64,000 bases of DNA from Octopus sinensis (taxonomy: Eukaryota): NCBI RefSeq assembly GCF_006345805.1, contig NC_043025.1:11904001-11968000 (forward strand), in the 5' to 3' direction. The notes below the pieces were generated by a model. That model did not search any database. It worked only from the letters and a program-made list of their open reading frames with translations, and had not been told where the DNA came from. Below are positions 85 through 62,391 of the stretch, one piece after another; position 1 is the first letter of the stretch, and each line of letters opens with the position of its first letter. The position numbers and the translations under genes were made by a program.

Positions 85-38322
<38,238 letters not shown>

Positions 38323-39092: not shown

Positions 39093-39963
39093 AAAAAAAA
39101 GTTACGAAGGATTATATGGGGTACTTAAACTAAATATAAGTACACTGTAACAAACCTATTTCTTTATTACCCTCAAGGGGCTAAACACAGAGGGGCAAAC
39201 AAGGACAGACAAAGGGATTAAATCGTTTACATCGACCCCCAGTGCGTAACTGGTACTTAATTCATTGACCCCGATAGGATGAAAGGCAAAGTCAACCTCG
39301 GCGGAATTTGAACTCAGAACGTAAAGACAGACGAAATACCTATTTCTATTTCTTTACTACCCACAAGGGGCTAAACACAGAGGGGACAAACAAGGACAGA
39401 CATAGGTATTAAGTCGATTATATCGACCCCAGTGCGTAACTGGTACTTAATTTATCAAATCACACAATACCGTCTTAAAAGAAACGGAGGACACCTTGAT
39501 TAATGGGTACTACTTGAGAACAGTGGTCCCGGTGCGCGCACTCGCGTAGTCGCGCATCCGTGCTAGCTAGTCGTGACTAGTCGATCCTAAGACTACCTCG
39601 TAAAGTAAATAAAACACAAAATAAATGCTTTTTTATCAAAATTTTTTACACAAAGTAAGGATCGACTAGTCATGACTAGTCATACTCAATTAAGGACCGC
39701 TTCAGGGAAGGGGGGAGGGGTTAAACAACAAACAACCGAAGGGTCCCTACCTTGAAGCAAAGTTTCTAAGAGAGAACTTCCTAATTACTTTTAAATTGCG
39801 CGCATTATTTTAAAAGACGAGAGGACACCTTAATGTAGTCCTTGGTATCTCTAGACAGAAAGGATACGGCTGAAAGGCTTTTGATTATAAAATTTGGGTC
39901 CAAACGGGGCCGACCGGGACCTAAACAACAATATAAACAAGAACAAGGAAGGGGTTGGCTTAC

Positions 39964-42579: not shown

Positions 42580-43846
42580 ATATGTGTGTGTGTGTGTGTG
42601 TGTGTGGTTATATGTGTATGTGTGCATGGTTGTGTATATGTGTCAGTGTGCTTGTCTGTGTGTATATGTGTGTACATATACGTGTAGATGTATGTGTGTG
42701 TATACATATATATTTGTGTGTGTGTGTGTGTATACATATATATTTGTGTGTATATGTGTCAGAGTGTTTGTGTGTATGTGCATGTGCCGATGTGTGTGTG
42801 TGTGTATATATTTGTGCGTGTATATTTGTCAGTGTGTATGTGTGTACATATATGTGTAGATGTATGTGTGTGAGTATATATTTGTGTGTGCATATGTATG
42901 TGTATGCATGTGTATGTGTGTATATATTTGTATGTGTATATATGTATATGTGCACGTGTGTGTGTATATGTATTTATGTGTGTATGTGTGTCAGTGTGTT
43001 TGTGTGTATGTGCATGTACATATATGTGTAGATGTATGTCTGTGTGTGTGTATATATATATATATTTGTGTGTGCATATGTATATGTGTATGTGTGTATA
43101 TATATGTATGTGTATGTATGCATATGTGTGTGTGTGTGTGTATATTTGTCTATGTGCATGTATGTATGTATATGTGTGTATATATATATGTTTGTATGTG
43201 TCTGTATGTGCGTGTATATGTGCATGTATATATTTGTGTTTGCATATGTATATGCATGTGTGTATGCCGGCTTTTTACCAGTAAAGGTTTTAGTTGCCAA
43301 TTCTGTACAAGACATTGTAGATCTTTAGCTGGGCTAAAAAGTCACATTCGATCACAGCACCAGTAACAGTTAAGCTTCGTGCAATAGCCATACTCGATAA
43401 CGAGGGGGCAGCCATCATCATGTATGTATGTATATGGGAAGGGTCTTCCTAGGATGCTGACATGCAGTGTCTGTGCAAGACCCTGCCTCAGTAAAGCTGG
43501 ACTCAAGAGTCATCTTCGTAGTCATAAAGCGAGACAGATGAGTGACAACCTGGCCACTGGTGGTGGTGTAACACACCATACTAATCATATCTGTCGGGCA
43601 TGTGGAAGAGAGTGTAATTCGGCAGGTGGACTTAAACGACATGCAAAGGTACATGAAGCCCAGTTACAACTACAGCCGGCTGTTGGCCGGTAAAGGTTTT
43701 AGTTGCCAATTATGTACAAGACATTGTAGATCTTTGGCTGGGCTAAAAAGTCACATTCGATCACAGCACCAAAAACAGTTAAGCTTCGTGCAATGGCCAT
43801 ACTCGATAACGAGGGGGCAGCCATCAAATGTGTGTGTGTTTATGTA

Positions 43847-43913
<67 letters not shown>

Positions 43914-43931
43914 TGTGTATGTATGTCTGCT

Positions 43932-43969
<38 letters not shown>

Positions 43970-44270
43970 TCTGTGTGTGTGTTTATATATATGCATGTCT
44001 GCTTGTGTGTGTGTGTGCATATGTGTGTGTGTATGTGAGAGAGAGAGAGAGTCTGTGTGTATATGTATGTGTGTGTATATATATATGCATGTGTATGTAG
44101 TCTGCTTGTGTGTATGTCTGCTTGTGTGTGTGTGTGCATATGTGTGTGTGTATGTGAGAGAGAGAGAGAGAGTCTGTGTGTATATGTATGTGTGTGTATA
44201 TATATATATGCATGTGTATGTATGTCTGCTTGTGTGTGTATGTGTGTGTGCACATGTACGTGTATGCATG
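42580..44270. repeat. Degenerate (TG)/(TA) microsatellite field with an embedded LINE end
   Basis: Directly visible. Confidence 0.9.
43266..43826 (+). mobile_element. RTE-type LINE 3' end with CxxC..HxxxH motifs; terminal about 140 bp duplicated
   Basis: CSVCARPCLSKAGLKSHLRSH, CRACGRECNSAGGLKRHAKVH, CQLCTRHCRSLAGLKSHIRSQH, then a short CAT tail, embedded in microsatellite. Confidence 0.6.
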
Positions 44271-44429
44271 TATGATTGTTGATATTCCACAGGTTCCCTT
44301 GTATCTGTCTGAACAAAACAGTTATTTCACGTTTGTATTCCTTGTTGACACAACCACTGCCTCCTCTGCGCTTTCAAAGACCTTTGGAATATAAAGAAAC
44401 ATCCATTATTTCATAAAAAAAAAACAGGT

Positions 44430-45490
44430 AAAGATTAGAGACAGGTAAACCACCAGGCCATGAAATCATACCATATCATTCATTTCATTGTTGGACCGTG
44501 GTCGAGACAATGGAATTTACTATGTTACGCCAGACTTCACGGTCCATCATAGCATTATGGAGGTCCTGTTGCTGGATGCCTGTATCCCTGGAGATTACAT
44601 CAGGGTAGGAGAGTGTGCGCCCTCTGGTATCAAAGAAGCTTGAGAGGCAGTTGGATGGAACTTACACTCGCCTCCTTATGAGAGCTCAAAATCTCTCGTG
44701 GAAGCATCATCCAACCCTCTAGGTAAAGATTAGAGACAGGTAAAGATTAGAGACAGGTAAACCACCAGGCCATGAAATCATACCTCATCATTCATTTCAA
44801 TGTTCGACCGTGGTCGAGACAATGGAATTTACTGTGTTACGCCAGACTTCACGGTCCATCATAGCATTATGGAGGTCCTGTTGCTGGATGCCTGTATCCC
44901 TGGAGATTACATCAGGGTTGGAGAGTGTGCACCCTCTGGTATCAAAGAAGCTTGAGAGGCGGTTGGATGGAACTTACACTCGCCTCCTTATGAGAGCTCA
45001 AAATCTCTCGTGGAAGCGCCATCCAACCAAAGTACAAATATATGGGAAATAACCACCTGTGTCATCTCAGAGCCATAGGTTGCAGGGTTGTTGAGAATTC
45101 AAACTTAAAATCTTCAAAGCCACTGTCGAACCAATTCTACTATATGGCCCAGAAACCTGGACGTTATCAAAGAAGCTTGAGAGGCGGTTGGATGGAACTT
45201 ACACTCGCCTCCTTATGAGAGCTCAAAATCTCTCGTGGAAGTGTCATCCAACCAAAGTACAAATATAAAAAACTGCCGGTCAAACCGAAAAGCTCAAAAT
45301 CACGGTCCATCATAGCATTATCGAGGTCTTGTTGCTGGTGCCTGTATCCCTGGAGATTACATCAGGGTAGGAGAGTGTGCACCCTCTGGTATCAAAGACG
45401 TTATCAAGAAGCTTGAGAGGCAGTTGGATGGAACTTACACTTGCCTCCTTATGAGAGCTCAAAATCTCTCGTGGAAGCATCATCGAACCC
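44430..45490. mobile_element. Rearranged RTE-like LINE fragments in both orientations
   Basis: Plus strand: LLYGPETWTLSKKLERRLDGTYTRLLMRAQNLSWK. Minus strand: YPDVISRDTGIQQQDLHNAMMDREVWR. Repeated 3-4 times. Confidence 0.75.
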
Positions 45491-45811
45491 TCTCAGTCTT
45501 TCGGAGAGGCACTGAGCAGCTACACGCACACATACACACACGGCAGTAACTCCCACCTACCGAATTCAAATACAAAGCTTCGGTCGACTCGGGGTTATAG
45601 TGGAAGACACCTACCCAAAGTGCCATGCAGTGGGACTGAACCCGGAACCATGTAGCTAGGAAGCAAGTTCCCTAACCACACAGCCATGCCCACGCCTACA
45701 AAAAAATGTATGTACATATACGCAGCGCTATGCGTGTGGCAAGTTTTCTACGGCCGGATGCCCTTACTGACGCCAAAAAACTGCCGGTCAAACCGAAAAG
45801 ATCCAAACAAT

Positions 45812-46123
45812 TTGATCCAATAATAGAAATATTAAAATTACTAAGTCTCTATAAAAGAGATTACGACAGCGTTTACTGGAAATTAATTGTTATCGCCATA
45901 TTAATATGGCATTCTTATAGATATAAGAATAATCGCTGCCGCTGGTCAGCTCCATGAGGCCACCGCCTTAAGATAGCTATTGATACACGATCTGTATCCA
46001 TTATAACCTTCGAACACGGGAGGTCAGCCGCTTCACACTGCCAGTCCGACAGCTACAGACGCGTTTCGGGGTATTGCCCCTTGTCAATGTAGCGCAGTCA
46101 GACCCAATAATTGATCCAATAAT
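45812..46123 (-). mobile_element. About 290-bp hairpin-rich insertion with a hammerhead, between 13-bp direct repeats
   Basis: TTGATCCAATAAT at 45812-24 and 46111-23. Internal palindromes ATTCTTATAGATATAAGAAT and GCCATATTAATATGGC. Confidence 0.6.
46052..46093 (-). ncRNA. Minimal type I hammerhead with U3-A8 core variant (family D)
   Basis: GCTACA-TTGACAA-GGGG(CAATA)CCCC-GAA-ACGCGT-C-TGTAGC. Perfect 6-bp stem I, 4-bp stem II, palindromic stem III, GUC triplet. Confidence 0.8.
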
Positions 46124-46304
46124 TCTAAATATAACTCACCTTACACGTTCAACTCCTTTCTTCCATCGTGTCCGTCGGTCTTCCGACTCTCCAAGTCCTT
46201 TTATCTGAGGATTGCCAGGTCCGGATTATCCTCAAACAACGACGACTCGCTTCCCCTCTGTATGGTTTCTCTCTCGGCTTCACGCTCGCTTCGTCCTCTT
46301 GTTG

Positions 46305-47117
46305 TTATCCTTTCGCTGTAGGAATTTCCCAGACAGTTTCCAGCTTCGATGCGAACCAAACGGCTCTGCGTTTCCTGCATCCACGCTTCTTGCATTTGAA
46401 TTTCTTTGGCAAGGGCTTTTTCCTCCAGTAGCAGCACATGCAAACCACATGGAAGCAATGCCAGATCCGATGTTTGGCACTGCGCAGACGGTCCCTCCAT
46501 GTGAATTTATATGATAACCCCATTGAATCCTCCGATTCGGAATCCGACGAGGACAATTCCGATGGTGAGAAGGTCAGTGATTGGGACAATGTATTTAAGG
46601 AGGGAAGGTGTATGTTTGAAGAATGAGCAGGAATATATGCTGGGGAATATGAACGGATCAGGGCGGGGTGTTTCTGCCGGCGTGTATGCGGGGGCGATGT
46701 TGGCTGCTTAGAAGAGAGCGGTGGGGGTGATGGGCGTGAGGGAGGTGACGGGCTTGGGGCACAGAGCCTGTGTGGAGGAGAGCGCCAGCGTGAGCGAGAG
46801 GGCGGCGGGCTCGGCGGAGAGGGAGGGCGCGGGGGAGAGGGATATCGTGTGGGAGAAGGCGGGGATGGGGGAGTGGATGGGCGTGGTGGTGGAGAGAATC
46901 GTCGTTTTGGAGGAGTGGGCGGACGCGGGGGAGGGACCGGACTCGGGGGAGAGGGTGGGCGTGGGGGAGAGCGTGGACGGTGGGGTGTGGGACGGCGTGC
47001 GACATTCGGTGGGCGTCGGTCTGAGGGAGAGGACTGATCCGCAGATGAGGACGGGGGAGATGACGACGGCGACGATGACGATGACGATGACGACGACGAC
47101 GACGGTGGAGTTGGCAT
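46305..47117 (-). CDS. Hypothetical 270-aa Pro/Ser-rich protein with a Cys-rich/basic C-terminus and an RVxF-like motif
   Basis: Long ORF in a GC-rich, non-repetitive island. It lies inside a segment bounded by a T12-CTCCGTTAG acceptor (47152-54) and an AAG|GTGAGT donor (46139), with a YY1-type site about 870 bp upstream. No homologue recognised. Confidence 0.5.
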   Translation of the reverse strand: MPTPPSSSSSSSSSSSPSSSPPSSSADQSSPSDRRPPNVARRPTPHRPRSPPRPPSPPSPVPPPRPPTPPKRRFSPPPRPSTPPSPPSPTRYPSPPRPPSPPSPPPSRSRWRSPPHRLCAPSPSPPSRPSPPPLSSKQPTSPPHTRRQKHPALIRSYSPAYIPAHSSNIHLPSLNTLSQSLTFSPSELSSSDSESEDSMGLSYKFTWRDRLRSAKHRIWHCFHVVCMCCYWRKKPLPKKFKCKKRGCRKRRAVWFASKLETVWEIPTAKG

Positions 47118-47899
47118 TATTTTTTCCGAATAATACGAACAAATACGAAATCTAACGGAGAAAAAAAAAAAAGATGACTTGAAAACCGGGGGAAAAATGT
47201 ATCGGTTAATTTAAATCGATAGGGGTCAACAGGTTATCGATCAGTTGTGCAAATACTGAGATCGAAGGGTGAGAGCTGAAAGTAAAACAAAAAAAAAAGG
47301 AAGGAAAAGAAAAACGCTTGTTAATATAAGTTCATTAAATTATTAAAATAAATGATTGAAATAATTCGAAGAAATGGTTTAATAAGACCGAAATATCAAC
47401 CTGAGATCGATATGCTGTCAATTCTGAAGGGAAATCGAATGCTTTTACCAATTCTATTCCTACGCCATAATCACCTTGTGTCGTAATTTTTATTTGTCTA
47501 ATATATTAACGGTTTTCAGAAAACATTTCTCAATAGATTTCCGAAAGCCGTTAATAATTTTTCGATGGATGAAAATAACGGCCATTTTGAATTTGACTTC
47601 CCACAAGCAGAGACTTTGAAAGTAAAAGTAAATTCAATTTTCTTGAAATACTTTCAATTACTGTGCAATTTCGTTGATTTTGAAAGATGCTTATAACAGA
47701 ACAAAATGCTTAAATTCAAATTATTTCAAATTCGTTTCTAATAACAAAGTTAACAGTTCAATTGAATGTGGATAAGTCTACACGTTGATGTGTGAATAGA
47801 TGTGTATATATATATATATATTATATAAATATGTGTGTGTCTGTAAGCTTGCTTGTGTATATGTGTGCATGTGTAATTGCAATCTGTTTGAAACATAGA

Positions 47900-48050
47900 T
47901 TGTCCACGACAGGAATAAGTCCCGCGACGAGAAATGGTTCTTTCAGTGGACGTCCTTCGATATTTTTCGGAGTGACACCACATCCGCCATCTTGTCGGTC
48001 GAAACTTCGAAATATTCTCAATATGTCTCACCGTAATATATTTCTCAAAA
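47900..48050 (-). promoter_or_regulatory. CpG-rich candidate promoter with a YY1-type motif (AAGATGGCGG on minus, 47984-47993)
   Basis: YY1-type consensus in a CpG-rich patch upstream of the 270-aa ORF exon. Confidence 0.45.
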
Positions 48051-50600
48051 TAAAAAAGGCGCCGAGCTGGCAGACACGTTAGCGCGCCGGACGAAATACT
48101 GAGAAGTATTTCGTCTGCCATTACGTTCTGAGTTCAAATTCCGCCGAGGTCGACCTTTGCCTTTCATCCTTTCGGGGTCGATAAATTAAGTACCAGTTAC
48201 GCACTGGGGTCGATGTAATTGACTTAATACCTATGTCTGTCCTTGTTTGTCCCCTCTATGTTTAGCCCCTTGTGGGTAGTAAAGAAATAGAAATAGGTAT
48301 TTCGTCTGTCGTTACGTTCTGAGTTCAAATTCCGCCGAGGTCGACTTTGCCTTTCATCCTTTCGGGGTCGATAAATTAAGTACCAGTTACGCACTGGGGT
48401 CGATGTAATTTCGGCCGGCTTGCTAACGTTTCTGCCAGCTCGCCGCCGCCTTGATTACATGGCAAATATTGCATCATCATTATGTACAATTAATTCGTCA
48501 GCATATTTGTTGATAAGGTTATCGTGTCTTTCATGCAGTAAGAACTTCTTATTGTTCCCTACCCTCACCCGTATATACTTATATTACCATCATCATCGTC
48601 GTCGTTTAACGTCCGCTTTCCATACTGGCATGGGTTAGACCAGTTGACTGAGGGCTGGCGAACCAGCTCACTGCCTTAAATATTCTTTTCTACTCTAGGT
48701 TCAAGACCCAAAATTTTGTGGGAGGAGGCCAGTCGATTAGAGCCACCCCAGTATGCAACAGGTACTTAATTTATCAATCCCGAAAGGATGAAAGGCAAAG
48801 TCGACCTCGGCAGAATTTGAACTCAGAACATAAAGACAGACAAAATACCACTAAGCATTTCTCCCTGTTTGCTAACATTTCTGATTTCTTTACTACTCAC
48901 AAGGGGCTAAACACAGAGGGGACAAACAAAGGGATTAAGTCGATTAGATCGATCCCAGTGCTTAACTGGTACTTAATTTATCGACTCCGAAAGGATGAAA
49001 AGCAAAGTCGACCTCGGCGGAATTTGAACTCAGAACGTAACGGCAGACGAAATACCGCTAAGCATTTCGCCCGGCGCGCTAACGTTTCTGTCAACTTGCT
49101 GCCTTCCAGTTCATCAATATTGACATCACAAACTACCGTTTTCGGTCACACACATCAGCTGCATACTTTTCCAGCAATTAAAGGTTCACATTAGCTGTTT
49201 GCAACCTATGTGCTGCAGAACTTTCTGAAGTGCACACAGCAATGGATCAACCATTAAGCAAAATAAGCAACATGCTTAGGGCATCAAGGGAAGGAAGGGG
49301 GTACCACAGAAATGGGAAATGGTTTAGGGCATTTTTATCAAAACCTTAATCTGGCCTTGAGTGCACACCTAACAAAAAATTACCATTGATTTTCTTTTTA
49401 GTAGCATGACCTGCCAGATAATAATAAGCTTTGTCTCATACAGCCTGCTTCTTGAAAAAGGTTACTCTGACCTGGTTTACATCAACTGATAAATACTGCA
49501 ATCACATGCATATTATCTATAATGGTAGTTATAGTTGCACTTGTCACTCTAGGTGCAGAGGTCGTCTGTGCAATCACACATATCTTCTGATATCTCTATT
49601 AACAGGCATAAGATTTACAAGAGAGAGTATCATTGGTCGTCCCACAAAAAGCATAGATAGCGTAGGAGTGGCTGTGTGGTAAGTAGCTTGCTTACCAACC
49701 ACATGGTTCCAGGTTCAGTCCCACGGCATGGCACTTTGGGTAAGTGTCTTTTGCTATAGCCTCGGACCGACCAAAGCCCTGTGAGTGGATTTGGTAGGCG
49801 GAAACTGAAAGAAGCCCACCGTATATATGTGTGTATATACTCTTTTATATAGGTCGACTTTGCCTTTCCTCCTTTCGGGGTCGATAAATTAAGTACCAGT
49901 TTCGCACTGGGGTCGATGTAATCGACTTAATCCCTTTGTCTGTCCTTGTTTGTCCCCTCTGTGTTTAGCCCCTTGTGGGTAGTAAAGAAATATATACTCT
50001 TTTACTTGTTTCAGTCATTTGACTGCCGCCATGCTGGAGCACCGCCTGTAGTCGGGCAAATCGACCCCAGGACTTATTCTTTGTAAGCCTAGTACTTATT
50101 CTATCGGTCTCTTTTGCCGAATCGCTAAGTAACGGGGACATAAACACACCAGCATCAGTTGTAAATCGATGTTGTGAGTGGGGGGACAAACATATACACA
50201 TTCACACATACATACATATATATGACGGGCTTCTTTCAGTTTCCATCTACCAAATCCACTCACAAGGCTTTGGTTGGCCCGAGGCTATAGCAAAAGACAC
50301 TTGTCCAAGGTGCCACGCAGTGGGACTGAACCCGAAACCATGTGGTTGGTAAGCAAGCTACTTACCACACAGCCACTCCTGCATATATACATATATACGA
50401 CGGGCTTCTTTCAGTTTCCGTCTGCCAGATCCACTCACAAGGCTTTGGTCGGCCCGAGGCTATAGCAGAAGACACTTGTCCAAGGTGCCACGCAATGGGA
50501 CTGAACCCGAAACCATGTGGTTGGTAAGCAAGCTACTTACCACACAGCCACTCCTACGCCTCGGAGGATTGCCCATCCTAAATATGGTGTTATTAAAAAC

Positions 50601-51388: not shown

Positions 51389-51529
51389 ATGGAAGAAGTC
51401 GTGAAGACAGAGTTGGGTTGCACCATGGTGAAGAAGGTCGGTAGCAGTGCCGGCGGGTATATCTGCGGAGGAAACATCTTTGAGACGGACAAAGGAAAGA
51501 TCTATGTGAAGTTTAGCAACGATTCTACG
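51389..51529 (+). CDS. FN3K: FN3K exon 1 ([10 protein letters not shown]...[11 protein letters not shown])
   Basis: ATG in AAGATGG context, donor GTAAGT, 47 codons. Confidence 0.92.
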
Positions 51530-54178
51530 GTAAGTAATTCAGTTTTGGTACTACCAGCGAACGGGGAGTCCCGGTGCGCGCACTTGCGCATCCGCGCTAG
51601 CTAGACGTAAGTAATCGATCCTACAACGACTTTTTAACCCTAATTTTAAAAATTGTTTATAAAAATAATTTATTTACTTAGTTTAAAAAATTATTTACTT
51701 TGTTCGAAAAATATTATTTAATTTTCTTTGATATGTATTCAGCCTTGGCATCTTTTCGGTTTGATGGCAGTTTTTTCTAGCGGTGTCATATCAAATTGTC
51801 ACCCATAATTATAACCCTCGTATCGATCTATTGCATTTCAATCTGTTTTAGGGTTACGGTTAGGGTTAGGGGTGGAGGGAAGGGTATCTTTTTTCTTCAC
51901 AAATGTAAATAAACCGAATCTGTTTCTTAAACGAGGGACATATTCATACGGCACAGGATGTTTTTACCTCAATAGACGTCACTGATTGGTTGAAATTGCA
52001 TCAAAATTCAAATAGATATGGAGAATTAAGATTTATATTTTTGTATCTATTTCAGGCAATGCATATGTTTGAGGGTGAAATGGCCAGTTTGGAATCAATA
52101 CTTCACACCAAAGCTGTGAGAATTCCAAAACCATACAAGGTATGTTGTTGTTGTTGATGTTGCCACCGCCAGTTGCTGTTGGTGGTGGTGGTGGTTGCTG
52201 TTGTTGTTTGTGGTGGTGGTTGTTATTGCACTAAGTGCTGCTGGCTTAATTACTCACGACTCAAGGTAGAGAAGGTATACGTATTATACACAAGGTTTAG
52301 GTTTTTCAGAGGTACAGCCCCCCTAAAAATCCCCTGCGTATTATACACAAGGTTTAGGTTTTTCAGAGGTACAGCCCCCCTAAAAATCCCCTGCGTATTA
52401 TACACAAGGTTTAGGTTTTTCATAGGTACAGCCCCCCTAAAAATCCCCTGCGTATTATACACAAGGTTTAGGTTTTTCAGGAGGTACAGCCCCTAAAAAT
52501 CCCCTGCGTGTTATACTCAAGGGCAGACTTTACTCGAGGATTTATGGTATGCCTACCTTGTGGAAAGTTGTGGGCGTTGTCACATCGTGCTTATTATGCC
52601 ATCGTAATTCAAGAATGCTTCCACATTTTCTTCTCTGAGTGCCGCCTGGTTTCTCCAGTTTGGGAAACTTTGGCACATTTTCCCTGTTTTACTTGAGAGT
52701 TCCACAAATGTGATTTACATACCATACCTGTCCTCTAGTGGAGGCACATGGCCTAGTGGTTAGAGCAGCGGTCGAGGGATCGCGGGTTCGAATCTCAGAC
52801 CGGGTGATGTGTGTGTTTATGAGCGAAACACCTAAGCTCCACACGGCTCCGGCAGAAGGTAATGGCGAACTTCTGCTGACTCTTTCGCCACAACTTTCTC
52901 TCACTCTTTCCTCCTGCATCTTGCAGCTCAACTGCGACGGACCAGCATCCCGTCCAGGTGGGGAACCTATACGCCAAGGAAACCACGAAACCGGCCCTTA
53001 TAAGCCTGGCATGGCTCAAGAAGGAACATTGTGAAGGCACATGGCTTAGTCGTTAGAGCAGCGGACTCGCGGTCGAGGGATCGTGGGTTCGAATCTCAGA
53101 CCAGGTGATGTGTGTGTTTATGAGCTAAAACACCTAAGCTCCACGCGGCTCCGGCAGAAGGTAATGGCGAACTTCTGCTGACTCTTTCGCCTCAACTTTC
53201 TCTCACTCTTTCCTCCTGCATCTTGCAGCTCACCTGCGACGGACCGGCGTCCCGTCCAGGTGGGGAACCTATACGCCAAGGAAGCCGGGAAACCGGCCCT
53301 TATGAGCCTGGCATGGCTCGAGAATACAAAAAAACTTTCTCTCACTCTTTCCTCCTGCATCTAGCGGCTCACCTGTGATGGACCGGCGTCCCGTCCAGGT
53401 GGGGAACCTATACGCCAAGTAAACTGGGAAACCGGCCCTTATGAGCCAAGCCTGGCTAGAGAAGGAACACACCTGTCCTTTGCAGAAGAAAGCATGCTGT
53501 GTCAATAAACAACACCTGTCCTTAAAAGGTTAACCATACAGCCAAAAACTGCTACTGAATATGGAAAATATTAAACCATGCAATTTCTCTGTCTTTTGTG
53601 ATTTCTAATCCAGGTATTTAAGCTACCTGGAGATGGTGCAGCCTTAGCCATGGAGTATGTCGACCTGAAAAGAGGATTATCTACTTTTGCAGCTCAACTA
53701 GGCCAGCAGATGGCAGCGTAAGTATCATTAAATATGTTCTTCTCTGTGTCTCTCCCATGAAGCTGACAATCACACTAAGTGCAAGAGTGGCTTTTGTGCT
53801 ATGAAGCTTGCTTACTAACCACATGGCTCCGGGGGTTCAATCCCACTGCATGGCACCTTGGGCAAGTGTCTTCTACCATAGCCCTGGGATAACTGATGCC
53901 TTATACTCTTTTACTCTTTTACCTGTTTCAGTCATTTGACTGCGGCCATGCTGGAGCACCGCCTTTAGTCGAGCAACTCGACCCCGGGACTTATTCGTTT
54001 GTAAGCACAGTACTTATTCTGTCGGTCTCTTTTGCTGAACCGCTAAGTAACGGGAACGTAAACACACCAGCATCGGTTGTCAAACGATGTTTGGGGGACA
54101 AACACAGACACACAAACACACACACGCATACATATATATATATATACCATACACTATATATATATAATTATATACATA

Positions 54179-54250
<72 letters not shown>

Positions 54251-54255
54251 CATAC

Positions 54256-54307
<52 letters not shown>

Positions 54308-54345
54308 CACATATATATATATATATATTATATATATATATACAT

Positions 54346-54386
<41 letters not shown>

Positions 54387-54420
54387 CACATATATTATTA
54401 TATATATATATATATATACT

Positions 54421-54459
<39 letters not shown>

Positions 54460-54528
54460 CACATATATATATATATATAATATATATCATACACACACAT
54501 ATAATATATATATTATATATTATACATA

Positions 54529-54559
<31 letters not shown>

Positions 54560-55273
54560 ACACATCATCATCATCATCATCATTTAGCGTCCGTTTTCCA
54601 TGCTAGCATGGGTTGGACGGTTCTACTGGGGTCTGTGAAGCCAGAAGGCTTCATCAGCCCAGTCAAATCTGGCAGTGTTTCTACGGCTGGATGCCCTTCC
54701 TAACGCCAACCACTCCGTGAGTGTAGTGGGTGCTTTTTACGTGCCACCCGCACTGGTGCCAGACAGAGCGGCAAACGGCCACGAACGGATGGTGCTTTTT
54801 ATGTGCCACACCGGCACGAGGGCCAGGCGAGGCTGGCAACGGACACGAAACGGGGCGGTGCTGGCAACGGTCGCGAAACGGAAAGTTCTCTACATGCCAC
54901 CGGCACTGGTAACACATCTGCAATTTCCATTGATCGATTTCCATTGATCGATTTCGATTCTGATCCTCACTTGCCTCAATGGGTCTTCACAAGCAGAGTT
55001 TCGACATGCCACCGGCACTGGTAGCACATCCGCAATTTCCATGGATCGATTTCGATTCTGATCCTCACTTGCCTCAACACGTCTTCACAGTAGAGTTTTG
55101 TGTCCCAAGAAGGGAAGGTATGCATACGTAGGCTGGCTCCATCCCATGTAGAAGGCCACATTATATATATATATATATATACATACACAATATATATATA
55201 TATATATATATATACATAACACATATAATATATATATATATACATACACATATATATATATATATATATACAT

Positions 55274-55310
<37 letters not shown>

Positions 55311-55496
55311 CACATATATATATAATATATATATACATACACATAATATATATATATATATATATATACATACTATATATATATATATATATATACATAC
55401 ACATATATATATATATATACATACACCGATATATATATATATATATATATACATACCCATATATACATTATATATATATATTATATATACATACAC

Positions 55497-55530
<34 letters not shown>

Positions 55531-55532
55531 AT

Positions 55533-55596
<64 letters not shown>

Positions 55597-55709
55597 TATA
55601 TATTATATATACATACACACATATATATATATATTATATATACATACACACAATATATATATATATATATATAACATACACACATATATATATATATATA
55701 TATATACAT

Positions 55710-55784
<75 letters not shown>

Positions 55785-55820
55785 CACATATATAATATAT
55801 ATATATACTCATACACATAT

Positions 55821-55851
<31 letters not shown>

Positions 55852-58800
55852 CTACATACACATATATATATATATACATATATACAACGGGCTTCTTTCA
55901 GTTTCCGTCTACCAAATCCACTCACAAGGCTTTGGTCGACCCGAGGCTATAGTAGAAGACACTTGCCCAAGGTCCCACACAGTGGGACTGAACCCGGAAC
56001 CATGTGGTTGGTAAGCAAGCTACTTACCACACAGCCATTCCTGCGCCTATGTTATGAGTGGGTTTGGTAGACAGAAACTGTACAGAAGCCCCTCACATAC
56101 ACACACACATATATATATATATTCTTTCATTCTTTTACATGTTTCAGTCATTTGACTGTGGCCATGCTGGAGCACCGCCTTAATGGGGTTTTAGTAAAAG
56201 ACATCAACCCCTGGACTTATTCTATCACCTACCTCCATCTCTCCTTCCAGAGGAGGAGGCAGGGCTCTTCTACAACCAGCTGCTTCTTATCACACAGCCA
56301 CGCCTGCACCTACTAATAACACCCCATTACGGTTCTCATAAGGGTCACTTTGTTTATTCTATTAGGGTGCACAAACGCAACAAAGACTTATACACAAAAG
56401 AGAAGAAGGAGAGCAACAGGCTCCATGGTCACAGTGATGGTGGTGATGATGATGATGATGGCAAAGCACAATACCAGCCTCAGTTTGGCTTCCATGTGGA
56501 AACATGTTGTGGTAGAATCCCTCAACCCAATGAATGGAAGGACAGTTGGCCAGTAAGTTCAGTTCTTCTTTGCCACCTTCAACAGATTTTTTACATCTGG
56601 TTCCCAGTTCTTGGGGTACGGCCAGCTGGGGCACTGCTCTTTTTTTATGAGTTGATTTTACTACACCTCCTGCCATAATATACACGCACACACACATGCA
56701 CAAATGCACACACACGCTCACACTGTAGTACATTAATTACATCGTCGTCATCATAATCATCAGTGTCTTGTCATCATCAGCGTGTCATCATCATCATCAC
56801 TATTGTCATCATCATCATCATCATCAACATCTTTTAACATCCGTTTCTCATGCTGGCATGGGTTGGATGTGAATGCGCATGGCTCAGTGGGTAGAGCGTC
56901 AAGCCTACGATCGTGAGGTTGTGAGTTCGAATCCCGGACCGGAGGTTGCATGTTGTGTTCTTGAGCAAGACGCTTTATTTCACGTTTGCTCCATTTCACT
57001 CAGCTGAAGAAATGAGTTGCGACGTCACAGGTGCCAAGCTGTATCGGCCCCTTTGCCTTTCCCTTGGATAACATCAGTGGTGTGGAGAGGAGAGGCCAGT
57101 ATGCACGGGCGACTGCTGGCCTTCCATAAAACAACCTATTTCTTTACCACCCATAAGGGGCTAAATACAGAGGGGACAAACAAGGACAGACACACGGATT
57201 AAGTCGATTACATCGACCCCAGTGCGTAACTGGTACTTATTTAATCGACCCCGAAAGTATGAAAGGCAAAGTCAACCTCGGCGGAATTTGAACTCAGAAC
57301 GTAACGGCATACGAAATACCGCTAAGCATTTCGCCTGGCGTGCTAACGTTTCTGCCAGCTCGCCGCCTTGCTACGACTGCACCTATAATCTATGTTAAGT
57401 ATATGTTAAATGCACCTGTTTTCTTCATTTCTTTGTTCCAGGAACTCTATGCGGCCAAAATTGATAGTCAAGTCACCCACTTGGAAGAAAACGTAAGTCA
57501 GAACTGGTGTTTATATGACTTTCTTTCGTCTTCACATTCAGAGAGAAAATACCTTCTACTGTACACTAATCTGTATAATAATCTGCTTATTCATTCACTC
57601 ACTCGTTATGCTTTAATTGGTTAGAGAGGTGGAGGTGGAGTAAAAGTGAGAGAGAGAGTGTTTAGTTGCAAAGAAATTATTTTAAAAATCTGCCGGTCAA
57701 AGCGAAAAGATCCTAAGTAACATGAACAATTTCATATGACACTGGAAATTATTGTTGTTGACAACGCTCCGGAGAAATTGTATTCACCTCAATAGACGTC
57801 ATTGATTGGTTGAAATTGCAGAAATTGAAGAAAAACAACAACAAATATCTTACAAGCTACAGAATTTTCTCAAGAAAGCCAAGAGAAAAAGATGTTTTAT
57901 TTCGACACATTCTACCAGTATGAAGTTTAAAAGGGTTTAGTTACAAAGAAATTATTTTAAAAATCTGCCAGTCAAAGCGAAAAGATCCTAATATACCAAT
58001 CTATGTTTGTCTTTTCTTCTCTCAAAAGTTGGCAAAAAGTAGCATAGCCTCTTGCTCTTGTCGTTAAGTGGTATTACACTTAATTGCTCCTTGTTTGTCT
58101 GTAATTGCCTCAAGTGGGTCTCTGCATAATACTCCTCTTGTTACATAGATTACATCTCTACACTCCAACTGTCCTCTATATTTTCTCTTGTCTACATATT
58201 ATTCGTTATAATACATACATCGGTGGCGTAACGGTTAGCATGGTTGCCTTCCAAGCAGTCGATCCGGGTTCGACTCCCGACCGACGCAGGCGATAGTTTA
58301 CTACACTCTCAGAGGGGTTGGCGTTAGGAAAGGCATCCAGCTGTAGAAACCCTGGCAGATCAAGATTGGAGCTTGGTGCAGCCATCTGGTTCCCCAGCCC
58401 TCAGTCAAAATCGTCCAACCCATGCTAGCATGGAAAGCGGGCCTTAAACGATGATGATGATATATATATATATATATACACATACATGCCTGTATATATG
58501 TATATAAATATATATACACATACACGCATGTATATATATATATATATATATACACACTACACGCATGTATATATATATATATATGTATGTATATATAAGT
58601 ATATGAAAGAATGGAGTTGAACGACTTGTTAACAAATATCCTTTATTCTCGACATATGTTTCGAAGGCTGCATATTTCTAATTCCGAAGGAATAAGGAGT
58701 ACATTATGCAGATTTCTCATCAGCAAAATCAAGGAACTTATGTCGACATCAAAATGCACAAAAAACTTTTAGCTGACCGCTCTCAAGGAGACACGTAGTC

Positions 58801-59904
58801 TATGCCCTAGGGACGTAGCTTCAACCGTGTTCTTTCTGATGTGAATTTGCTACCCAGGTATCGGTTATCTTTCGAATTATCCTTAATAAGATAATTCACT
58901 CAGCTACTCAAATATATGTATATATATGTATGTATATATATATGTATGTATATACATACATACACTCACACACACATACATATATACACATGCATATACA
59001 CATACACACATAATGGCCAGACTCCTCTCTTGGCCATTAATCTCAAATTAGTCTGTGTCAACATCAACTTTGCTCCCTATCTTGATAAACTTTGTCACCA
59101 GGGGAGGACTTATTTATTTACACACTAAATTTGAGGGGCCGGGATGATACATGATTATTTCTCTTCCAGTTTCGGAATCATGAAGTCCGAGGACTCTGGG
59201 ACCAGTTATTGAGGAAATACTCCACATTCTTTGAGGACCTTCCTGATATTCACCCAGCTCTACTTCATGGGGATCTATGGAGTGGCAATGTATCAGAGAA
59301 TGACGAGGGACCTGGTGAGTATATTTTAGGGTTGTCCGGAAAGTTTGTGCCGATTTTTAAGGGAAAGAAAAAGGTCAATAAGTACTTGCTATTATATTTT
59401 TAATCAACCAAATATGAACCATTTTCTTGCACAATGCGTCTCCATCTTTCCTTTAACTTGAAAAAGTTGCAAGTTCAGTCCCACTACGTGGCACCTTGGG
59501 CAAGTGTCTTCTACTGTAGCCTCGGGCCGACCAATGCCTTGTGAGTGGATCTGGTAGGTGAAAACTGAAAGAAGCCAGTCCTATATATACATACACGTAC
59601 ATATACATACATATATATATACACATACATATATATATATATATATATACACATACATATATATATATATATATACACATACATATATATATATATATAT
59701 ATACATACACATACATATATATATATATATATATACACATACATATATATATATATACATACACATACATATATATATTATATATATAACATACATATAT
59801 ATTATATATATATACCATACATATATATATATATATATATACACATACATATATATATATATATATATACACACATACATATATATATATTATACACATA
59901 CATA

Positions 59905-59936
<32 letters not shown>

Positions 59937-60007
59937 ATATATATATATATATATACACACATACATATATATATATATATACACTACATATATATATATA
60001 TATATAT

Positions 60008-60042
<35 letters not shown>

Positions 60043-60725
60043 CCATACATATATTATATATATATATATATATACACATACATATATATACATATATATA
60101 CACATACATATATATACATATATATATATACACATAATATATATACATTATATATACACATACATATATATACATATATATATACACATACATATATATA
60201 CATAATATATACCACATACATATATATAATACATATATATATACACATACATATATATACATATATATATATACACATACATATATATACATACACATAC
60301 ATAATATACATATAATATACACATACATATATATACATATATATACACATACATATATATATACATCATATATACACATACATATATATATATATATATA
60401 CAACATACATATATATATATATACACATACATATATATATATATACCATACATATATATATATATATACACATACATATATATATATATACACCTACATA
60501 TATATATATATTATACCCATACATATATACACATACATATTATATAATATATACACATACATATATACACATACATATATTATATATATATACACATACA
60601 TATATACACATACATATATATATATATATATATACACATACATATATACACATACATATATATATATATATATACACATACATATATATACACATACATA
60701 TATATATATTAACACATACATATAT

Positions 60726-60768
<43 letters not shown>

Positions 60769-60889
60769 CATATATACACATACATATATATATATACACA
60801 TATATATATACACATACATATATACACATACATATATATATACCATACTATATACACATACATATATATATACACATACATATATACAC

Positions 60890-60956
<67 letters not shown>

Positions 60957-61621
60957 ACATACATATATATATATATATACACATACATATATATATATAT
61001 ACACATACATATATATATATATATACACATACATATATATATATATACACATACATATATATATATATACCATACATATATATATATATATACACATACA
61101 TATATATATATATATACACATACATATATATATATATATACACATACATATATATATATATATATACACATACATATATATATATATATATATACACATA
61201 CATATATATATATATATATACACATACATATATATATATATACACACATACATATATATATATATACACATACATATATATATATATATACACACATACA
61301 TATATATATATATATACACACATACATATATATATATATATACACATACATATATATATATATATACACATACATATATATATATATATACACATACATA
61401 TATATATAATATATATATACACATATATATATATTATATATATATACACATACACATATATTATATACATACATATATATATACACACATACATATATAT
61501 ATATACACATACATATATATATATACACACACATACATATATATATATATACACACATACATATATATATATATATACACATACATATATATATATATAA
61601 CACATACATATATATATATAT

Positions 61622-61654
<33 letters not shown>

Positions 61655-61862
61655 CACATACATATATATACACATACATATATATATATATACACACACA
61701 CATATATATATATACACCATATATATATAATATATACAATACATATATATATATATACACACATATATATATATATATACACATACATATATATATATAA
61801 TATATATACACATACATATATATTATATATATATATACACATACATATATATATATATATAT

Positions 61863-61893
<31 letters not shown>

Positions 61894-62094
61894 CACATAC
61901 ATATATATATATATATATATACACATACATATATATATATATATATATACACATACATATATATATATATATATACACACATATATATAATATATAATAT
62001 ATATATATATACAACATACATATATATATATATATATATACACATACATATATATATATATATATATACACATCATATATATATATACACATAC

Positions 62095-62130
<36 letters not shown>

Positions 62131-62157
62131 CACATACATATATATATATATATATAT

Positions 62158-62189
<32 letters not shown>

Positions 62190-62359: not shown

Positions 62360-62391
<32 letters not shown>

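What the first reader, a model, noticed from the sequence alone, without database searches (positions are those of the whole stretch)
46140..47151. Unrecognised 1-kb exon encoding a 270-aa Pro/Ser-rich protein with a PP1-docking-like tail
Seen: GC-rich unique DNA bounded by a strong acceptor (47152-54) and donor (46139), ATG 34 nt into the exon, and a YY1-type site at 47984-93. The protein has SPPRPPSPP-type repeats, an acidic SSSDSESEDS patch, a hydrophobic Cys cluster (IWHCFHVVCMCCYW) between basic runs, then KRRAVWFASKLETVWEI. Established: [RK]xVx[FW] followed by a hydrophobic pair is the RVxF-PhiPhi PP1-binding signature. Inference: a lineage-restricted, possibly palmitoylated PP1 regulator.
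Basis: partly seen in the sequence, partly recalled or inferred. Interest (0 to 1): 0.7.

Follow-up and report, generated by a model that had tools for sequence, protein, structure and literature searches.

The report
Unannotated conserved octopus protein gene
This stretch of Octopus sinensis DNA holds a real protein-coding gene that current annotations miss; three octopus species have kept it under selection for about 34 million years, and its conserved tail looks like a docking site for protein phosphatase 1, though that function is untested.

Summary
Window 46305-47117 (-) is a 270-codon ORF with the reported motifs, splice-like sites and YY1-type site.

The window is Octopus sinensis CM016887.1:11,904,001-11,968,000. 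The ORF lies 4.3 kb upstream of, and divergent from, a ketosamine-3-kinase (FN3K-like) gene.

It is a real coding gene:
- In the Pro/Ser-rich half, codon positions 1-2 are C-dominated and position 3 is random.
- Against O. vulgaris, 7 of 8 substitutions are synonymous (dN/dS 0.05).
- Against O. bimaculoides (split about 34 Mya), the C-terminal 102 codons give dN/dS 0.29, versus 1.1-1.5 in shifted frames that contain stops. Indels there are multiples of three, and start and stop are conserved.

No gene is called here in any of the three annotations. No homolog appeared in protein databases of 5.8 and 1.84 billion sequences, Pfam or PDB.

The PP1 reading is plausible but unproven. FASKLETVWEIP is invariant, and the RVxF-type site is RAVWF in O. 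sinensis and KVVRF in O. bimaculoides, where it fits the strict consensus. Such motifs arise by chance in 5-8% of composition-matched shuffles, and binding was not testable. Palmitoylation and lineage restriction remain open.

Unexpectedly, the 840 nt upstream is more conserved (90%) than the coding sequence.

The parts
47984..47993 (-). YY1-type motif AAGATGGCGG inside a nearly invariant, CpG-rich block (about 48055-47900). Putative core promoter or start of a 5' non-coding exon.
   Evidence: It is the only match in the window, with 0.07 expected. It is identical in O. sinensis, O. vulgaris and O. bimaculoides. The block is 91% identical between O. sinensis and O. bimaculoides.
47152..47983 (-). 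Conserved non-coding block between the YY1-type site and the acceptor. It may be a putative intron 1, part of a 5' exon, or a regulatory region.
   Evidence: It is 90.0% identical to O. bimaculoides over 839 nt, against 77% for the CDS tail and unalignable FN3K intron 1. There is no conserved ORF and no significant 3-periodicity of substitutions, and it holds 8 upstream ATGs. CpG o/e is 1.45.
47485..47578 (.). Stable palindromic hairpin inside the conserved block.
   Evidence: The + strand folds at -27 kcal/mol (z -5.3) and the - strand at -21.2 kcal/mol (z -4.0). Rfam gives only sub-threshold generic miRNA-hairpin hits, e.g. bantam at 24 bits against a gathering score of 61. The arm sequences were not found in the supplements of the octopus miRNA paper.
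47152..47171 (-). Polypyrimidine tract plus AG: a candidate 3' splice site (acceptor).
   Evidence: Sequence. It is one of 9 such sites in the window. CCGTTAG|ATTT is conserved in O. bimaculoides.
47118..47151 (-). 5' leader, untranslated.
   Evidence: It is 34 nt in O. sinensis and 33 nt in O. bimaculoides, so its reading phase is not conserved and the ATG at 47117 is the start. The context AAAATAATGC is conserved.
46305..47117 (-). Coding sequence: 270 codons plus a TAA stop.
   Evidence: dN/dS is 0.05 against O. vulgaris and 0.29 against O. bimaculoides over the C-terminal 102 codons, with shifted-frame controls at 1.1-1.5.
46701..47117 (-). Pro/Ser/Arg-rich low-complexity half (residues 1-139). 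It holds a poly-Ser run, SPPRPP-type repeats, most of the protein's 23 S/T-P sites, and all 5 [ST]Px[KR] sites.
   Evidence: Codon-position entropies are 1.52, 1.24 and 1.99 bits. Pro uses CCA 20, CCC 21, CCG 17, CCT 8. AlphaFold2 predicts no secondary structure here.
46524..46553 (-). Acidic serine patch SSSDSESEDS (residues 189-198).
   Evidence: The corresponding patch in O. bimaculoides is SLSETDSEIS.
46377..46472 (-). Conserved His/Cys-rich hydrophobic segment followed by a basic run (residues 216-247): HRIWHCFHVVCMCCYWRKKPLPKKFKCKKRGC.
   Evidence: WHCFH, MCCYWRKK and KRGC are invariant between O. sinensis and O. bimaculoides, but C226 is Phe in O. bimaculoides. The only PDB resemblance is the eL40 zinc ribbon at E 0.82, which is not significant.
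46323..46367 (-). RVxF-type motif plus a hydrophobic pair (residues 251-265): RAVWFASKLETVWEI.
   Evidence: Regex matches are. The O. bimaculoides version is KVVRFASKLETVWEI, and FASKLETVWEIP is invariant.
46140..46304 (-). 3' untranslated part of the same exon.
   Evidence: It is 80% identical to O. bimaculoides and 95.8% to O. vulgaris, against 99.0% for the CDS.
46134..46142 (-). Candidate 5' splice site (donor) AAG|GTGAGT.
   Evidence: It is one of only two AAGGTRAGT sites in the window. O. bimaculoides has GTCAGT. Alignability with O. bimaculoides is lost about 35 nt downstream. No AATAAA or ATTAAA occurs on this strand in the 2.3 kb after the stop.

Best explanation
Window 46305-47117 (-) is the single coding exon of a real, unannotated Octopus gene. 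In genome coordinates it is O. sinensis CM016887.1:11,950,305-11,951,117. It sits head-to-head with a ketosamine-3-kinase (FN3K-like) gene 4.3 kb away.

Shown: the reading frame has been kept under purifying selection since before the O. bimaculoides / O. vulgaris-sinensis split, about 34 Mya.

The protein has two parts.
- Residues 1 to about 200 are predicted disordered and rich in Pro, Ser and Arg. The protein has 23 Ser/Thr-Pro sites, five fitting [ST]Px[KR], plus an acidic Ser patch. This region evolves quickly, by substitutions and in-frame indels.
- A 65-residue C-terminal module is well conserved. It runs YKxTWRxRLR, WHCFH, MCCYWRKK, a basic run, C-x4-C, an RVxF-type site, then FASKLETVWEIP.

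Inferred mechanism: the tail docks the protein phosphatase 1 catalytic subunit through the RVxF pocket and the adjacent hydrophobic (PhiPhi) pocket. The preceding basic run helps this binding. Docking brings PP1 next to the heavily phosphorylatable N-terminal region, so the protein would be a PP1-interacting protein, acting as regulator, substrate or both. The conserved Cys pair next to basic residues would anchor the protein to membrane by S-acylation, or bind metal.

Gene model, inferred: a promoter or 5' non-coding exon near the YY1-type site, the ORF-containing exon at 47151-46140, then a 3'-UTR intron starting at 46139.

My confidence by tier: real selected coding gene about 0.93; exon boundaries as proposed about 0.6; PP1 docking about 0.4; S-acylation about 0.25.
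For: Coding status:
- In the Pro-rich half, the third codon position is random (1.99 bits) while positions 1 and 2 are 57% and 72% C. Microsatellite-derived Pro/Ser ORFs elsewhere in the window do not show this.
- 131 further codons of ordinary composition stay open, which happens in 0.2-1.2% of shuffles or simulations.
- O. vulgaris has the same 270-aa ORF. Of 8 differences, 7 are synonymous third-position changes (p 0.0026), dN/dS is 0.05, and the adjacent 3'UTR part diverges four times faster.
- In O. bimaculoides the start MPTPPSSSS and the stop position are conserved. Over the C-terminal 102 codons dN/dS is 0.29, and 0.20 for the last 68. Shifted frames give 1.1-1.5 and contain stops. The four indels in the C-terminal 125 codons are 3, 6, 18 and 3 nt.
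- The locus is syntenic in all three species, upstream of and divergent from FN3K.
- The sequence is single-copy in the window.
- CpG o/e is 1.1-1.5 across 45808-48100, against 0.61 for the window.

PP1 docking:
- RAVWF and KVVRF fit the RVxF patterns. RKVVRF in O. bimaculoides also fits the strict [KR][KR][ACHKMNQRSTV]V[CHKNQRST][FW] consensus quoted in PMC4794898.
- A hydrophobic pair (VW) follows six residues later, in line with the extra PhiPhi(xF) motif listed for PP1 regulators in PMC11536154.
- FASKLETVWEIP is the longest invariant block of the protein.
- Basic residues precede the motif, and the last 66 residues carry a net charge of +17.

Exon model.
Against: - No transcript, ribosome-profiling or peptide evidence could be consulted.
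- The gene is absent from three annotations, one of which was built with long-read RNA data.
- The stop codon lies 166 nt upstream of the proposed donor. In many animals that would expose the mRNA to nonsense-mediated decay.
- The putative upstream intron is 90% conserved, which is unlike the other introns seen here. The 5' structure may therefore differ from the proposed model.
- The RVxF pattern is degenerate. It appears in 11-34% of composition-matched shuffles with the loose pattern, and RVxF plus PhiPhi appears in 5-8% of shuffles of the C-terminal part.
- O. sinensis and O. vulgaris have Trp at the x position, which the strict consensus excludes.
- AlphaFold2 without an alignment draws a helix over the motif rather than an extended strand, but at pLDDT below 50.
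- The middle of the O. bimaculoides ORF lies in an assembly gap. One apparent 1-nt offset sits at the gap edge.
- No counterpart of the tail was found in the 39 kb around the Argonauta hians FN3K gene.
Confidence: 0.4

Rival explanations
1. It is a real, selected protein, but the conserved tail has nothing to do with PP1. On this reading the His/Cys cluster plus basic run is a small metal-binding or nucleic-acid-binding module, or a nuclear or nucleolar targeting signal. It is attached to an SR-like, proline-directed phospho-region, and the RVxF resemblance is a coincidence.
For: - The only structural-database resemblance is to the eL40 zinc ribbon. Its C-x2-C-Y-x-R...C-x4-C spacing is similar, at E 0.82.
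- The last 66 residues have a net charge of +17, and KKPLPKKFKCKKRGCRKRR looks like a nuclear localisation signal.
- The N-terminal SPPRPP/RRxSP composition resembles SR-related nuclear proteins (my knowledge, not tested).
- RVxF-like strings arise by chance at 5-34% in this composition.
Against: - The eL40 match is not significant, and it disappears with a two-species profile. There is no Pfam hit.
- One of the four would-be zinc ligands (C226) is Phe in O. bimaculoides.
- The most strictly conserved block is the RVxF-PhiPhi-like stretch itself, not the Cys spacing.
Confidence: 0.42
2. It is a membrane-associated adaptor. The hydrophobic segment with the conserved CC pair flanked by basic residues is S-acylated and holds the protein on a membrane. 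The proline-rich region recruits SH3 or WW domain proteins. PP1 may or may not be a partner.
For: - MCCYWRKK is invariant.
- The hydrophobic stretch is only about 15 residues, too short for a transmembrane helix but suited to a peripheral anchor (sequence).
- The protein has many RxxPxxP / PxxPx[KR]-type strings (sequence).
- AlphaFold2 proposes a helix at 207-233, at low confidence.
Against: Nothing here tests acylation or localisation. The hydrophobic stretch contains two His residues. This explanation does not account for the invariance of FASKLETVWEIP.
Confidence: 0.12
3. It is not a gene. On this reading it is a chance ORF in a C-rich, CpG-island-like promoter or lncRNA exon, kept open because GC-rich DNA has few stop codons.
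For: - All three forward frames and one reverse frame are open across 46708-47117.
- No protein homolog exists anywhere.
- It is not annotated in three genomes.
- The neighbouring non-coding DNA is also conserved.
Against: - Third-position randomisation occurs only in this frame.
- 7 of 8 substitutions against O. vulgaris, and 36 of 71 against O. bimaculoides, fall on third positions (p 0.003 and 0.002).
- dN/dS is 0.05-0.29 here against more than 1 in the shifted frames, which also carry stops.
- Indels are in frame.
- The frame stays open through 131 codons of 49% GC DNA.
Confidence: 0.04
4. It is a fragment of a multicopy transposon or a processed pseudogene.
For: The window is 68% repeats, and SINE-like elements abut the locus at 45553-45807 and 48056-48447.
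Against: - 45808-47785 has no second copy in the window.
- The locus is at the same syntenic position in three species.
- There is no match to Pfam or to any protein, including transposon proteins.
- It is under purifying selection.
Confidence: 0.02

Closest known systems
PP1-interacting proteins defined by an RVxF docking motif followed by a PhiPhi motif (e.g. PNUTS, spinophilin, NIPP1, GADD34/PPP1R15A)
   Same: - It has a basic run, then [RK]-x-V-x-F, then a hydrophobic pair six residues later.
- The protein is otherwise predicted to be disordered.
- The motif block is the best-conserved part of the protein.
- RVxF as the primary PP1 recruitment motif, and PhiPhi(xF) as an added motif, are described in PMC11536154.
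   Different: - It has no sequence homology to any of these proteins.
- The protein ends 15 residues after the Phe of the motif, so there is no room for the Arg motif or the helices that those regulators add.
- Trp at the x position in O. sinensis and O. vulgaris is atypical.
- Binding is untested.
Inhibitor-3 / PPP1R11 (Ypi1 family)
   Same: It has the same ingredients in a small disordered protein. These are an RVxF site, basic patches, a cluster of adjacent cysteines followed by an aromatic or aliphatic residue, an acidic Ser/Glu patch and a Pro-rich region. In I3, the RVxF site (KVEW), the basic residues and a CCC motif together bind PP1, and the cysteines engage the active-site metals (PMC10066265).
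   Different: - The order along the chain is inverted. Here it is Pro-rich, acidic, CC, basic, RVxF. In I3 it is RVxF, basic, CCC, with the acidic and Pro-rich parts after that by my recollection of the sequence.
- There is no match to the Pfam family.
- Only two adjacent Cys are conserved.
- A reversed chain direction may not reach the active site in the same way.
eL40 (ribosomal protein L40e) zinc ribbon
   Same: The spacing is similar: C-x2-C-Y-x-R, then 10-12 residues, then C-[KR]-K-[KR]-x-C, embedded in basic residues.
   Different: - E 0.82 is not significant.
- The match is lost in a profile search.
- The first Cys of the C-x2-C is Phe in O. bimaculoides.
Taxonomically restricted ('orphan') genes that encode disordered proteins
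   Same: - No detectable homolog outside a narrow clade.
- Low complexity and a single coding exon.
- Missed by annotation pipelines.
   Different: - Third codon positions in the Pro-rich half are randomised, and the gene is under clear purifying selection over at least 34 My. It is therefore not a very young de novo ORF (dates from doi 10.1101/2023.05.16.540928).
- Its true phylogenetic range is unknown.

Membership tests
Bona fide protein-coding gene | The reading frame, start and stop are conserved in orthologous loci of related species | tested here: met
   O. vulgaris has an identical-length 270-aa ORF. O. bimaculoides has the same start and the same stop position, but its middle lies in an assembly gap.
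Bona fide protein-coding gene | Purifying selection specific to this frame (dN/dS below 1, third-position excess, in-frame indels) | tested here: met
   dN/dS is 0.05 (O. sinensis vs O. vulgaris) and 0.29 (O. sinensis vs O. bimaculoides), against 1.1-1.5 in shifted frames. The third-position excess has p 0.003 and 0.002. Indels are 3, 6, 18 and 3 nt.
Bona fide protein-coding gene | Transcribed and translated | not testable with these tools
   No cephalopod RNA-seq or proteomics data could be reached. The protein databases hold no Logan-derived octopus copy even of the neighbouring FN3K, so absence there says nothing about expression.
RVxF-type PP1-interacting proteins | The sequence fits the RVxF consensus | tested here: met
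   RAVWF and KVVRF fit [RK]x0-1[VI]{P}[FW] and the Hendrickx-type pattern. Only the O. bimaculoides form fits the strict pattern (strict pattern as quoted in PMC4794898).
RVxF-type PP1-interacting proteins | A second hydrophobic (PhiPhi) motif lies 5-8 residues after RVxF | tested here: met
   VW follows six residues after the Phe and is invariant. The chance rate is 5-8% in shuffles of the C-terminal part.
RVxF-type PP1-interacting proteins | The motif lies in an accessible, disordered region | tested here: inconclusive
   The AlphaFold2 single-sequence model has pLDDT below 50 over residues 226-270 and draws a helix at 249-262.
RVxF-type PP1-interacting proteins | The motif is conserved in orthologs | tested here: met
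   V, F and the following 11 residues are invariant across about 34 My.
RVxF-type PP1-interacting proteins | Physical binding to PP1c that is lost on V/F-to-A mutation | not testable with these tools
   This needs a bench assay or a complex prediction.
Inhibitor-3 / PPP1R11 (Pfam PPI_Ypi1) | Sequence match to the family profile | tested here: not met
   No Pfam family matches at E up to 10, for the whole protein or for the tail.
Inhibitor-3 / PPP1R11 (Pfam PPI_Ypi1) | Order along the chain is RVxF, then basic residues, then the Cys cluster | tested here: not met
   Here the Cys cluster (226-229) precedes the basic run and the RVxF site (251-255). The I3 order is given in PMC10066265.
PPP1R15 (GADD34) and PPP1R3 (glycogen-targeting) PP1 regulators | Family domains are present (PP1c-binding domain of PPP1R15; CBM21 of PPP1R3) | tested here: not met
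   No Pfam hit. The protein ends 15 residues after the Phe of the motif.
eL40-type zinc ribbon | Significant sequence similarity and four conserved Cys ligands | tested here: not met
   E is 0.82 with a single sequence and there are no hits with a profile. C226 is Phe in O. bimaculoides.
S-acylated (palmitoylated) peripheral membrane proteins | Cysteines carry thioester-linked acyl chains | not testable with these tools
   Only the context can be read. The conserved CC is flanked by hydrophobic and basic residues.
Transposon fragment / multicopy repeat | Many dispersed copies; similarity to transposon proteins | tested here: not met
   It is unique within the window, syntenic and single in three species' loci, and has no protein or Pfam match. 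Genome-wide copy number was not testable.

The most novel reading that the evidence does not exclude
The protein is a cephalopod-restricted PP1 inhibitor built from the same parts as the ancient Inhibitor-3, but in reverse order along the chain. Those parts are RVxF docking, a basic stretch for the acidic groove, and adjacent cysteines that touch the active-site metals. That would show this inhibitory mechanism can evolve independently and work with opposite chain polarity. Separately, the 840-nt non-coding block upstream, which is more conserved than the coding sequence and holds a very stable hairpin, may be a regulatory RNA or a small-RNA precursor.
Probability: 0.07. Interest if true: 0.7.

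Novelty: new member of a known kind. Interest (0 to 1): 0.42.

Why it matters
- It adds a selected protein-coding gene that three octopus genome annotations miss. It also shows how low-complexity, single-exon genes escape the pipelines.
- If the tail does dock PP1, it would be a clade-specific phosphatase regulator or substrate in animals whose nervous-system signalling is of wide interest.
- Its Inhibitor-3-like parts list in inverted order would make a useful natural experiment on how disordered proteins engage PP1.
- The conserved non-coding block next to it is a candidate regulatory element worth a look in its own right.

Tried and rejected
- Whole-protein and C-terminal searches of the 5.8-billion-protein database found nothing.
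- The exhaustive HMMER search of 1.84 billion representatives gave two hits. Both are artefacts of repetitive proteins: a translated tandem repeat and a bacterial repeat protein.
- Pfam was negative on the whole protein and on both species' tails.
- PDB was negative by sequence and by profile, apart from an insignificant eL40 match.
- The metagenome contig scan with the conserved tail found no relative.
- An exact look-up of the ORF product in public assemblies found it is not on record.
- AlphaFold2 without an alignment gave pLDDT 50. That is too low for a fold search, so none was run.
- Argonauta hians: the 39-kb locus around its FN3K gene has no counterpart of the tail. A GC-rich Pro-rich open frame upstream runs off the fetched DNA, so orthology could not be judged.
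- I looked for a coding extension upstream of the ATG and rejected it. The leader length differs by 1 nt between species.
- I looked for a hidden ORF in the conserved upstream block and found none conserved.
- Rfam has no family at gathering score in the window other than two tRNAs, and only weak generic hairpin hits at 47495-47560.
- The bacterial promoter/terminator scan is irrelevant for this eukaryote.
- Loci L003 and L004 were not available to scripts, so I imported them through alignments.
Full report
**What is at the coordinates**

- The ATG lies 34 nt after a polypyrimidine tract and AG (47171-47152).
- The stop is followed by 166 nt and then AAG|GTGAGT (46134-46142).
- AAGATGGCGG sits at 47984-47993.
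- The donor 9-mer occurs twice in the window, acceptor-like tracts nine times, and the YY1-type 10-mer once against 0.07 expected.
- The segment has 56% GC in a 41% GC window.
- 45808-47785 is the longest stretch with no second copy in a window that is 68% self-repetitive.
- This unique stretch has CpG observed/expected of 1.1-1.5, against 0.61 for the window and 0.2-0.6 for most other unique pieces.

**Where the window comes from**

Scanning the plus strand for coding pieces turned up six exons of a fructosamine/ketosamine-3-kinase-like gene between 51389 and 63629. A search with the joined pieces found ketosamine-3-kinase of Octopus sinensis (XP_029653025.1) as the best hit. The DNA around that gene is 100% identical to window 41389-64000. 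The window is therefore O. sinensis GCA_006345805.1, CM016887.1:11,904,001-11,968,000. The ORF lies 4.3 kb upstream of the kinase gene, on the opposite strand. No gene is called in the 10 kb upstream of the kinase in O. sinensis. None is called in the corresponding loci of O. vulgaris or O. bimaculoides either.

**Is it coding? Evidence from the sequence alone**

All frames are open across the C-rich part (46708-47117), so ORF length there proves nothing. Two other signals do carry weight.
- In the Pro/Ser-rich half, codon positions 1 and 2 are 57% and 72% C, but position 3 is evenly A/C/G/T (entropy 1.99 bits). All four Pro codons and six Ser codons are used. Pro/Ser ORFs derived from microsatellites elsewhere in the window do not show this.
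- The same frame then stays open through 131 codons of ordinary 49% GC sequence. That happens in 0.2% of mononucleotide shuffles and 1.2% of first-order Markov simulations.

**Is it coding? Evidence from comparison**

I fetched the orthologous loci through the kinase gene.

O. vulgaris (split about 2.5 Mya):
- It has an ORF of the same 270 codons.
- Of 8 nucleotide differences, 7 are synonymous third-position changes and 1 changes Ser113 to Tyr. dN/dS is 0.05, and the probability of 7 or more of 8 on one codon position is 0.0026.
- The 166-nt 3' untranslated part has 7 differences.

O. bimaculoides (split about 34 Mya):
- The start MPTPPSSSS and the stop position are conserved. The Pro-rich middle falls in an assembly gap.
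- The last 102 codons align without gaps, with 36 of 71 differences on third positions (p 0.002).
- dN/dS is 0.29 overall and 0.20 for the last 68 codons. The two shifted frames give 1.1-1.5 and contain stops.
- The indels in the C-terminal 125 codons are 3, 6, 18 and 3 nt.
- The 5' leader is 34 nt in one species and 33 nt in the other, so the ATG at 47117 is the start and there is no upstream coding extension.

Together these results show a protein-coding gene kept by purifying selection. The chance-ORF, lncRNA and transposon-fragment readings are rejected.

**Gene structure**

- Both splice-like motifs are conserved (GTGAGT, GTGAGT, GTCAGT at the donor).
- Alignability with O. bimaculoides ends about 35 nt past the donor. 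The same happens just after the donor of the kinase gene's exon 1.
- No AATAAA or ATTAAA occurs on this strand in the 2.3 kb after the stop.
- The upstream side is unusual. The 839 nt from the YY1-type site to the acceptor are 90% identical between O. sinensis and O. bimaculoides. That is more than the coding tail (77%), the 3' UTR part (80%) or the kinase promoter (79%). The kinase intron and the DNA beyond the donor cannot be aligned at all.
- The block has no conserved ORF, no significant codon periodicity and 8 upstream ATGs. It is therefore non-coding and probably not a scanned 5' UTR.
- It contains a very stable hairpin at 47485-47578 (z -5.3). The hairpin gives only weak, generic matches to miRNA hairpin models. 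Its arms do not appear in the supplements of the octopus miRNA survey.
- Whether the block is a conserved first intron, part of a 5' exon or an independent regulatory element needs transcript data.

**What the protein looks like**

- Residues 1 to about 200 are 24% Pro, 21% Ser and 11% Arg over the whole protein.
- The protein has 23 Ser/Thr-Pro sites, five of them [ST]Px[KR], and an acidic patch SSSDSESEDS.
- AlphaFold2 without an alignment predicts no structure there. It predicts only low-confidence helices at 207-233 and 249-262 (mean pLDDT 50).
- The last 73 residues are 68% identical between O. sinensis and O. bimaculoides. The invariant blocks are WHCFH, MCCYWRKK, LPKK, KRGC and FASKLETVWEIP.
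- No relative was found in any search:
  - the 5.8-billion-protein database;
  - the exhaustive search of 1.84 billion representatives, which gave two repeat artefacts;
  - Pfam;
  - PDB, where the eL40 zinc ribbon scored E 0.82 with a single sequence and a profile found nothing;
  - metagenome contigs.
- The gene is unannotated even in Octopus, and the databases hold no octopus transcript-derived proteins for the neighbouring kinase either. These negatives therefore do not show that the gene is restricted to octopuses.

**How it most likely works**

- The tail reads KRRAVWFASKLETVWEI in O. sinensis and O. vulgaris, and NRKVVRFASKLETVWEI in O. bimaculoides.
- Both fit the general RVxF patterns. 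The O. bimaculoides form also fits the strict [KR][KR][ACHKMNQRSTV]V[CHKNQRST][FW] consensus.
- A hydrophobic pair follows six residues later, at the spacing seen for the PhiPhi motif. RVxF is the primary PP1 recruitment motif, and PhiPhi(xF) is one of the additional motifs (PMC11536154).
- Basic residues precede the site, and this stretch is the longest invariant block of the protein.
- I therefore take PP1 docking as the best single hypothesis, with the phosphorylatable N-terminal region as a likely substrate or regulatory arm.
- The case is motif-level only. The loose pattern appears in 11-34% of composition-matched shuffles, and RVxF plus PhiPhi in 5-8% of shuffles of the C-terminal part. 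Trp at the x position is atypical. Binding could not be tested.
- I put PP1 docking at about 0.4. A non-PP1 role for the Cys/His-basic module (metal or nucleic-acid binding, nuclear targeting) is about equally likely. A membrane anchor by S-acylation of the conserved CC pair is possible, either alone or in combination.

**Comparison with known systems**

- The protein is not a member of any known PP1 regulator family by sequence.
- It works like, at most, the RVxF-PhiPhi class of disordered PP1 interactors.
- It shares a parts list with Inhibitor-3: an RVxF site, basic residues and adjacent cysteines. In I3 the cysteines engage the PP1 active-site metals (PMC10066265). Here the order along the chain is inverted, so it is not a member of that family, and the analogy is only a lead.
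- It also fits the general picture of taxon-restricted genes that encode disordered proteins. However, its randomised synonymous sites and at least 34 My of constraint show it is not a newborn ORF.

**Verdict**

- 'Unrecognised coding exon' is well supported.
- 'PP1 regulator' is plausible but untested.
- 'Palmitoylated' and 'lineage-restricted' remain open.
- Interest is moderate. This is a solid missing-gene call with a testable function, plus an unexplained, highly conserved non-coding neighbour.

Noticed in passing
window 47152-48055: The non-coding block upstream of the ORF is 90% identical between O. sinensis and O. bimaculoides over about 840 nt. That is more conserved than the coding sequence next to it, while ordinary introns and intergenic DNA of these species cannot be aligned. 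I found no conserved ORF in it.
   Followed up: partly
window 47485-47578: A very stable palindromic hairpin sits inside that block (-27 kcal/mol, z -5.3). Rfam gives only weak sub-threshold hits to miRNA hairpin models (bantam 24 bits against a gathering score of 61). Its arm sequences do not occur in the supplements of the octopus miRNA paper. In O. bimaculoides one G.U pair becomes A-U, and a 13-nt deletion trims the outer stem.
   Followed up: partly
window 44270-44471: A unique 200-nt block 1.7 kb downstream of the donor is 89% identical to O. bimaculoides (L004:1-206, at the edge of the fetched DNA). It could be the next exon of this gene. It could instead be the 3' end of a plus-strand unit, since on the + strand it ends in a poly(A)-like run.
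   Followed up: partly
window 43270-43366 (+): An ORF ends in a C2H2 zinc-finger-like peptide, KGFSCQFCTRHCRSLAGLKSHIRSQHQ. The peptide is also present in O. vulgaris. It emerges from a TG/TA microsatellite and may be a transposon or gene remnant.
   Followed up: no
window 51389-63629 (+): A ketosamine-3-kinase (FN3K-like) gene. I recognised six coding pieces, at about 51389-51526, 52070-52150, 53602-53718, 56500-56580, 59200-59290 and 63440-63629. It is annotated as XP_029653025.1 (296 aa). The O. vulgaris model is 319 aa and the O. bimaculoides model 251 aa, so the models disagree.
   Followed up: partly
window 6576-15880: A satellite array of about 9 kb with an 89-bp unit (higher-order periods 178 and 267), 90-95% identity between copies and a strong G-over-C skew.
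   Followed up: no
window 59582-63160: A 3.6-kb (TA)n microsatellite lies inside an intron of the kinase gene. Further long TA, TG, GA and ATAG tracts occur at 1614-2151, 32942-33352, 42583-44250, 54128-54560 and 55162-55884.
   Followed up: no
window 1417-1498 and 58216-58289: tRNA-Ser(TGA), at 63.9 bits, and a weaker tRNA-Gly(TCC), at 37.4 bits. The second lies in a kinase intron and may be a tRNA-derived repeat head.
   Followed up: no
L002 1-2700 (Argonauta hians BAAFZT010000009.1): Upstream of the Argonauta FN3K gene, and on the opposite strand as in Octopus, there is a region of 66-76% GC. It carries an open Pro/Ser/Thr/Ala-rich frame of more than 900 codons that runs off the fetched DNA. 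It is not called as a gene. Whether it is related to the octopus ORF is unknown.
   Followed up: partly
window 16786-17208, 27914-28886, 48180-48399, 39237-39456, 57129-57373: Several families of dispersed and tandem SINE-like repeats with a unit of about 184 bp occur in both orientations. They make up much of the 68% of the window that is self-similar.
   Followed up: no
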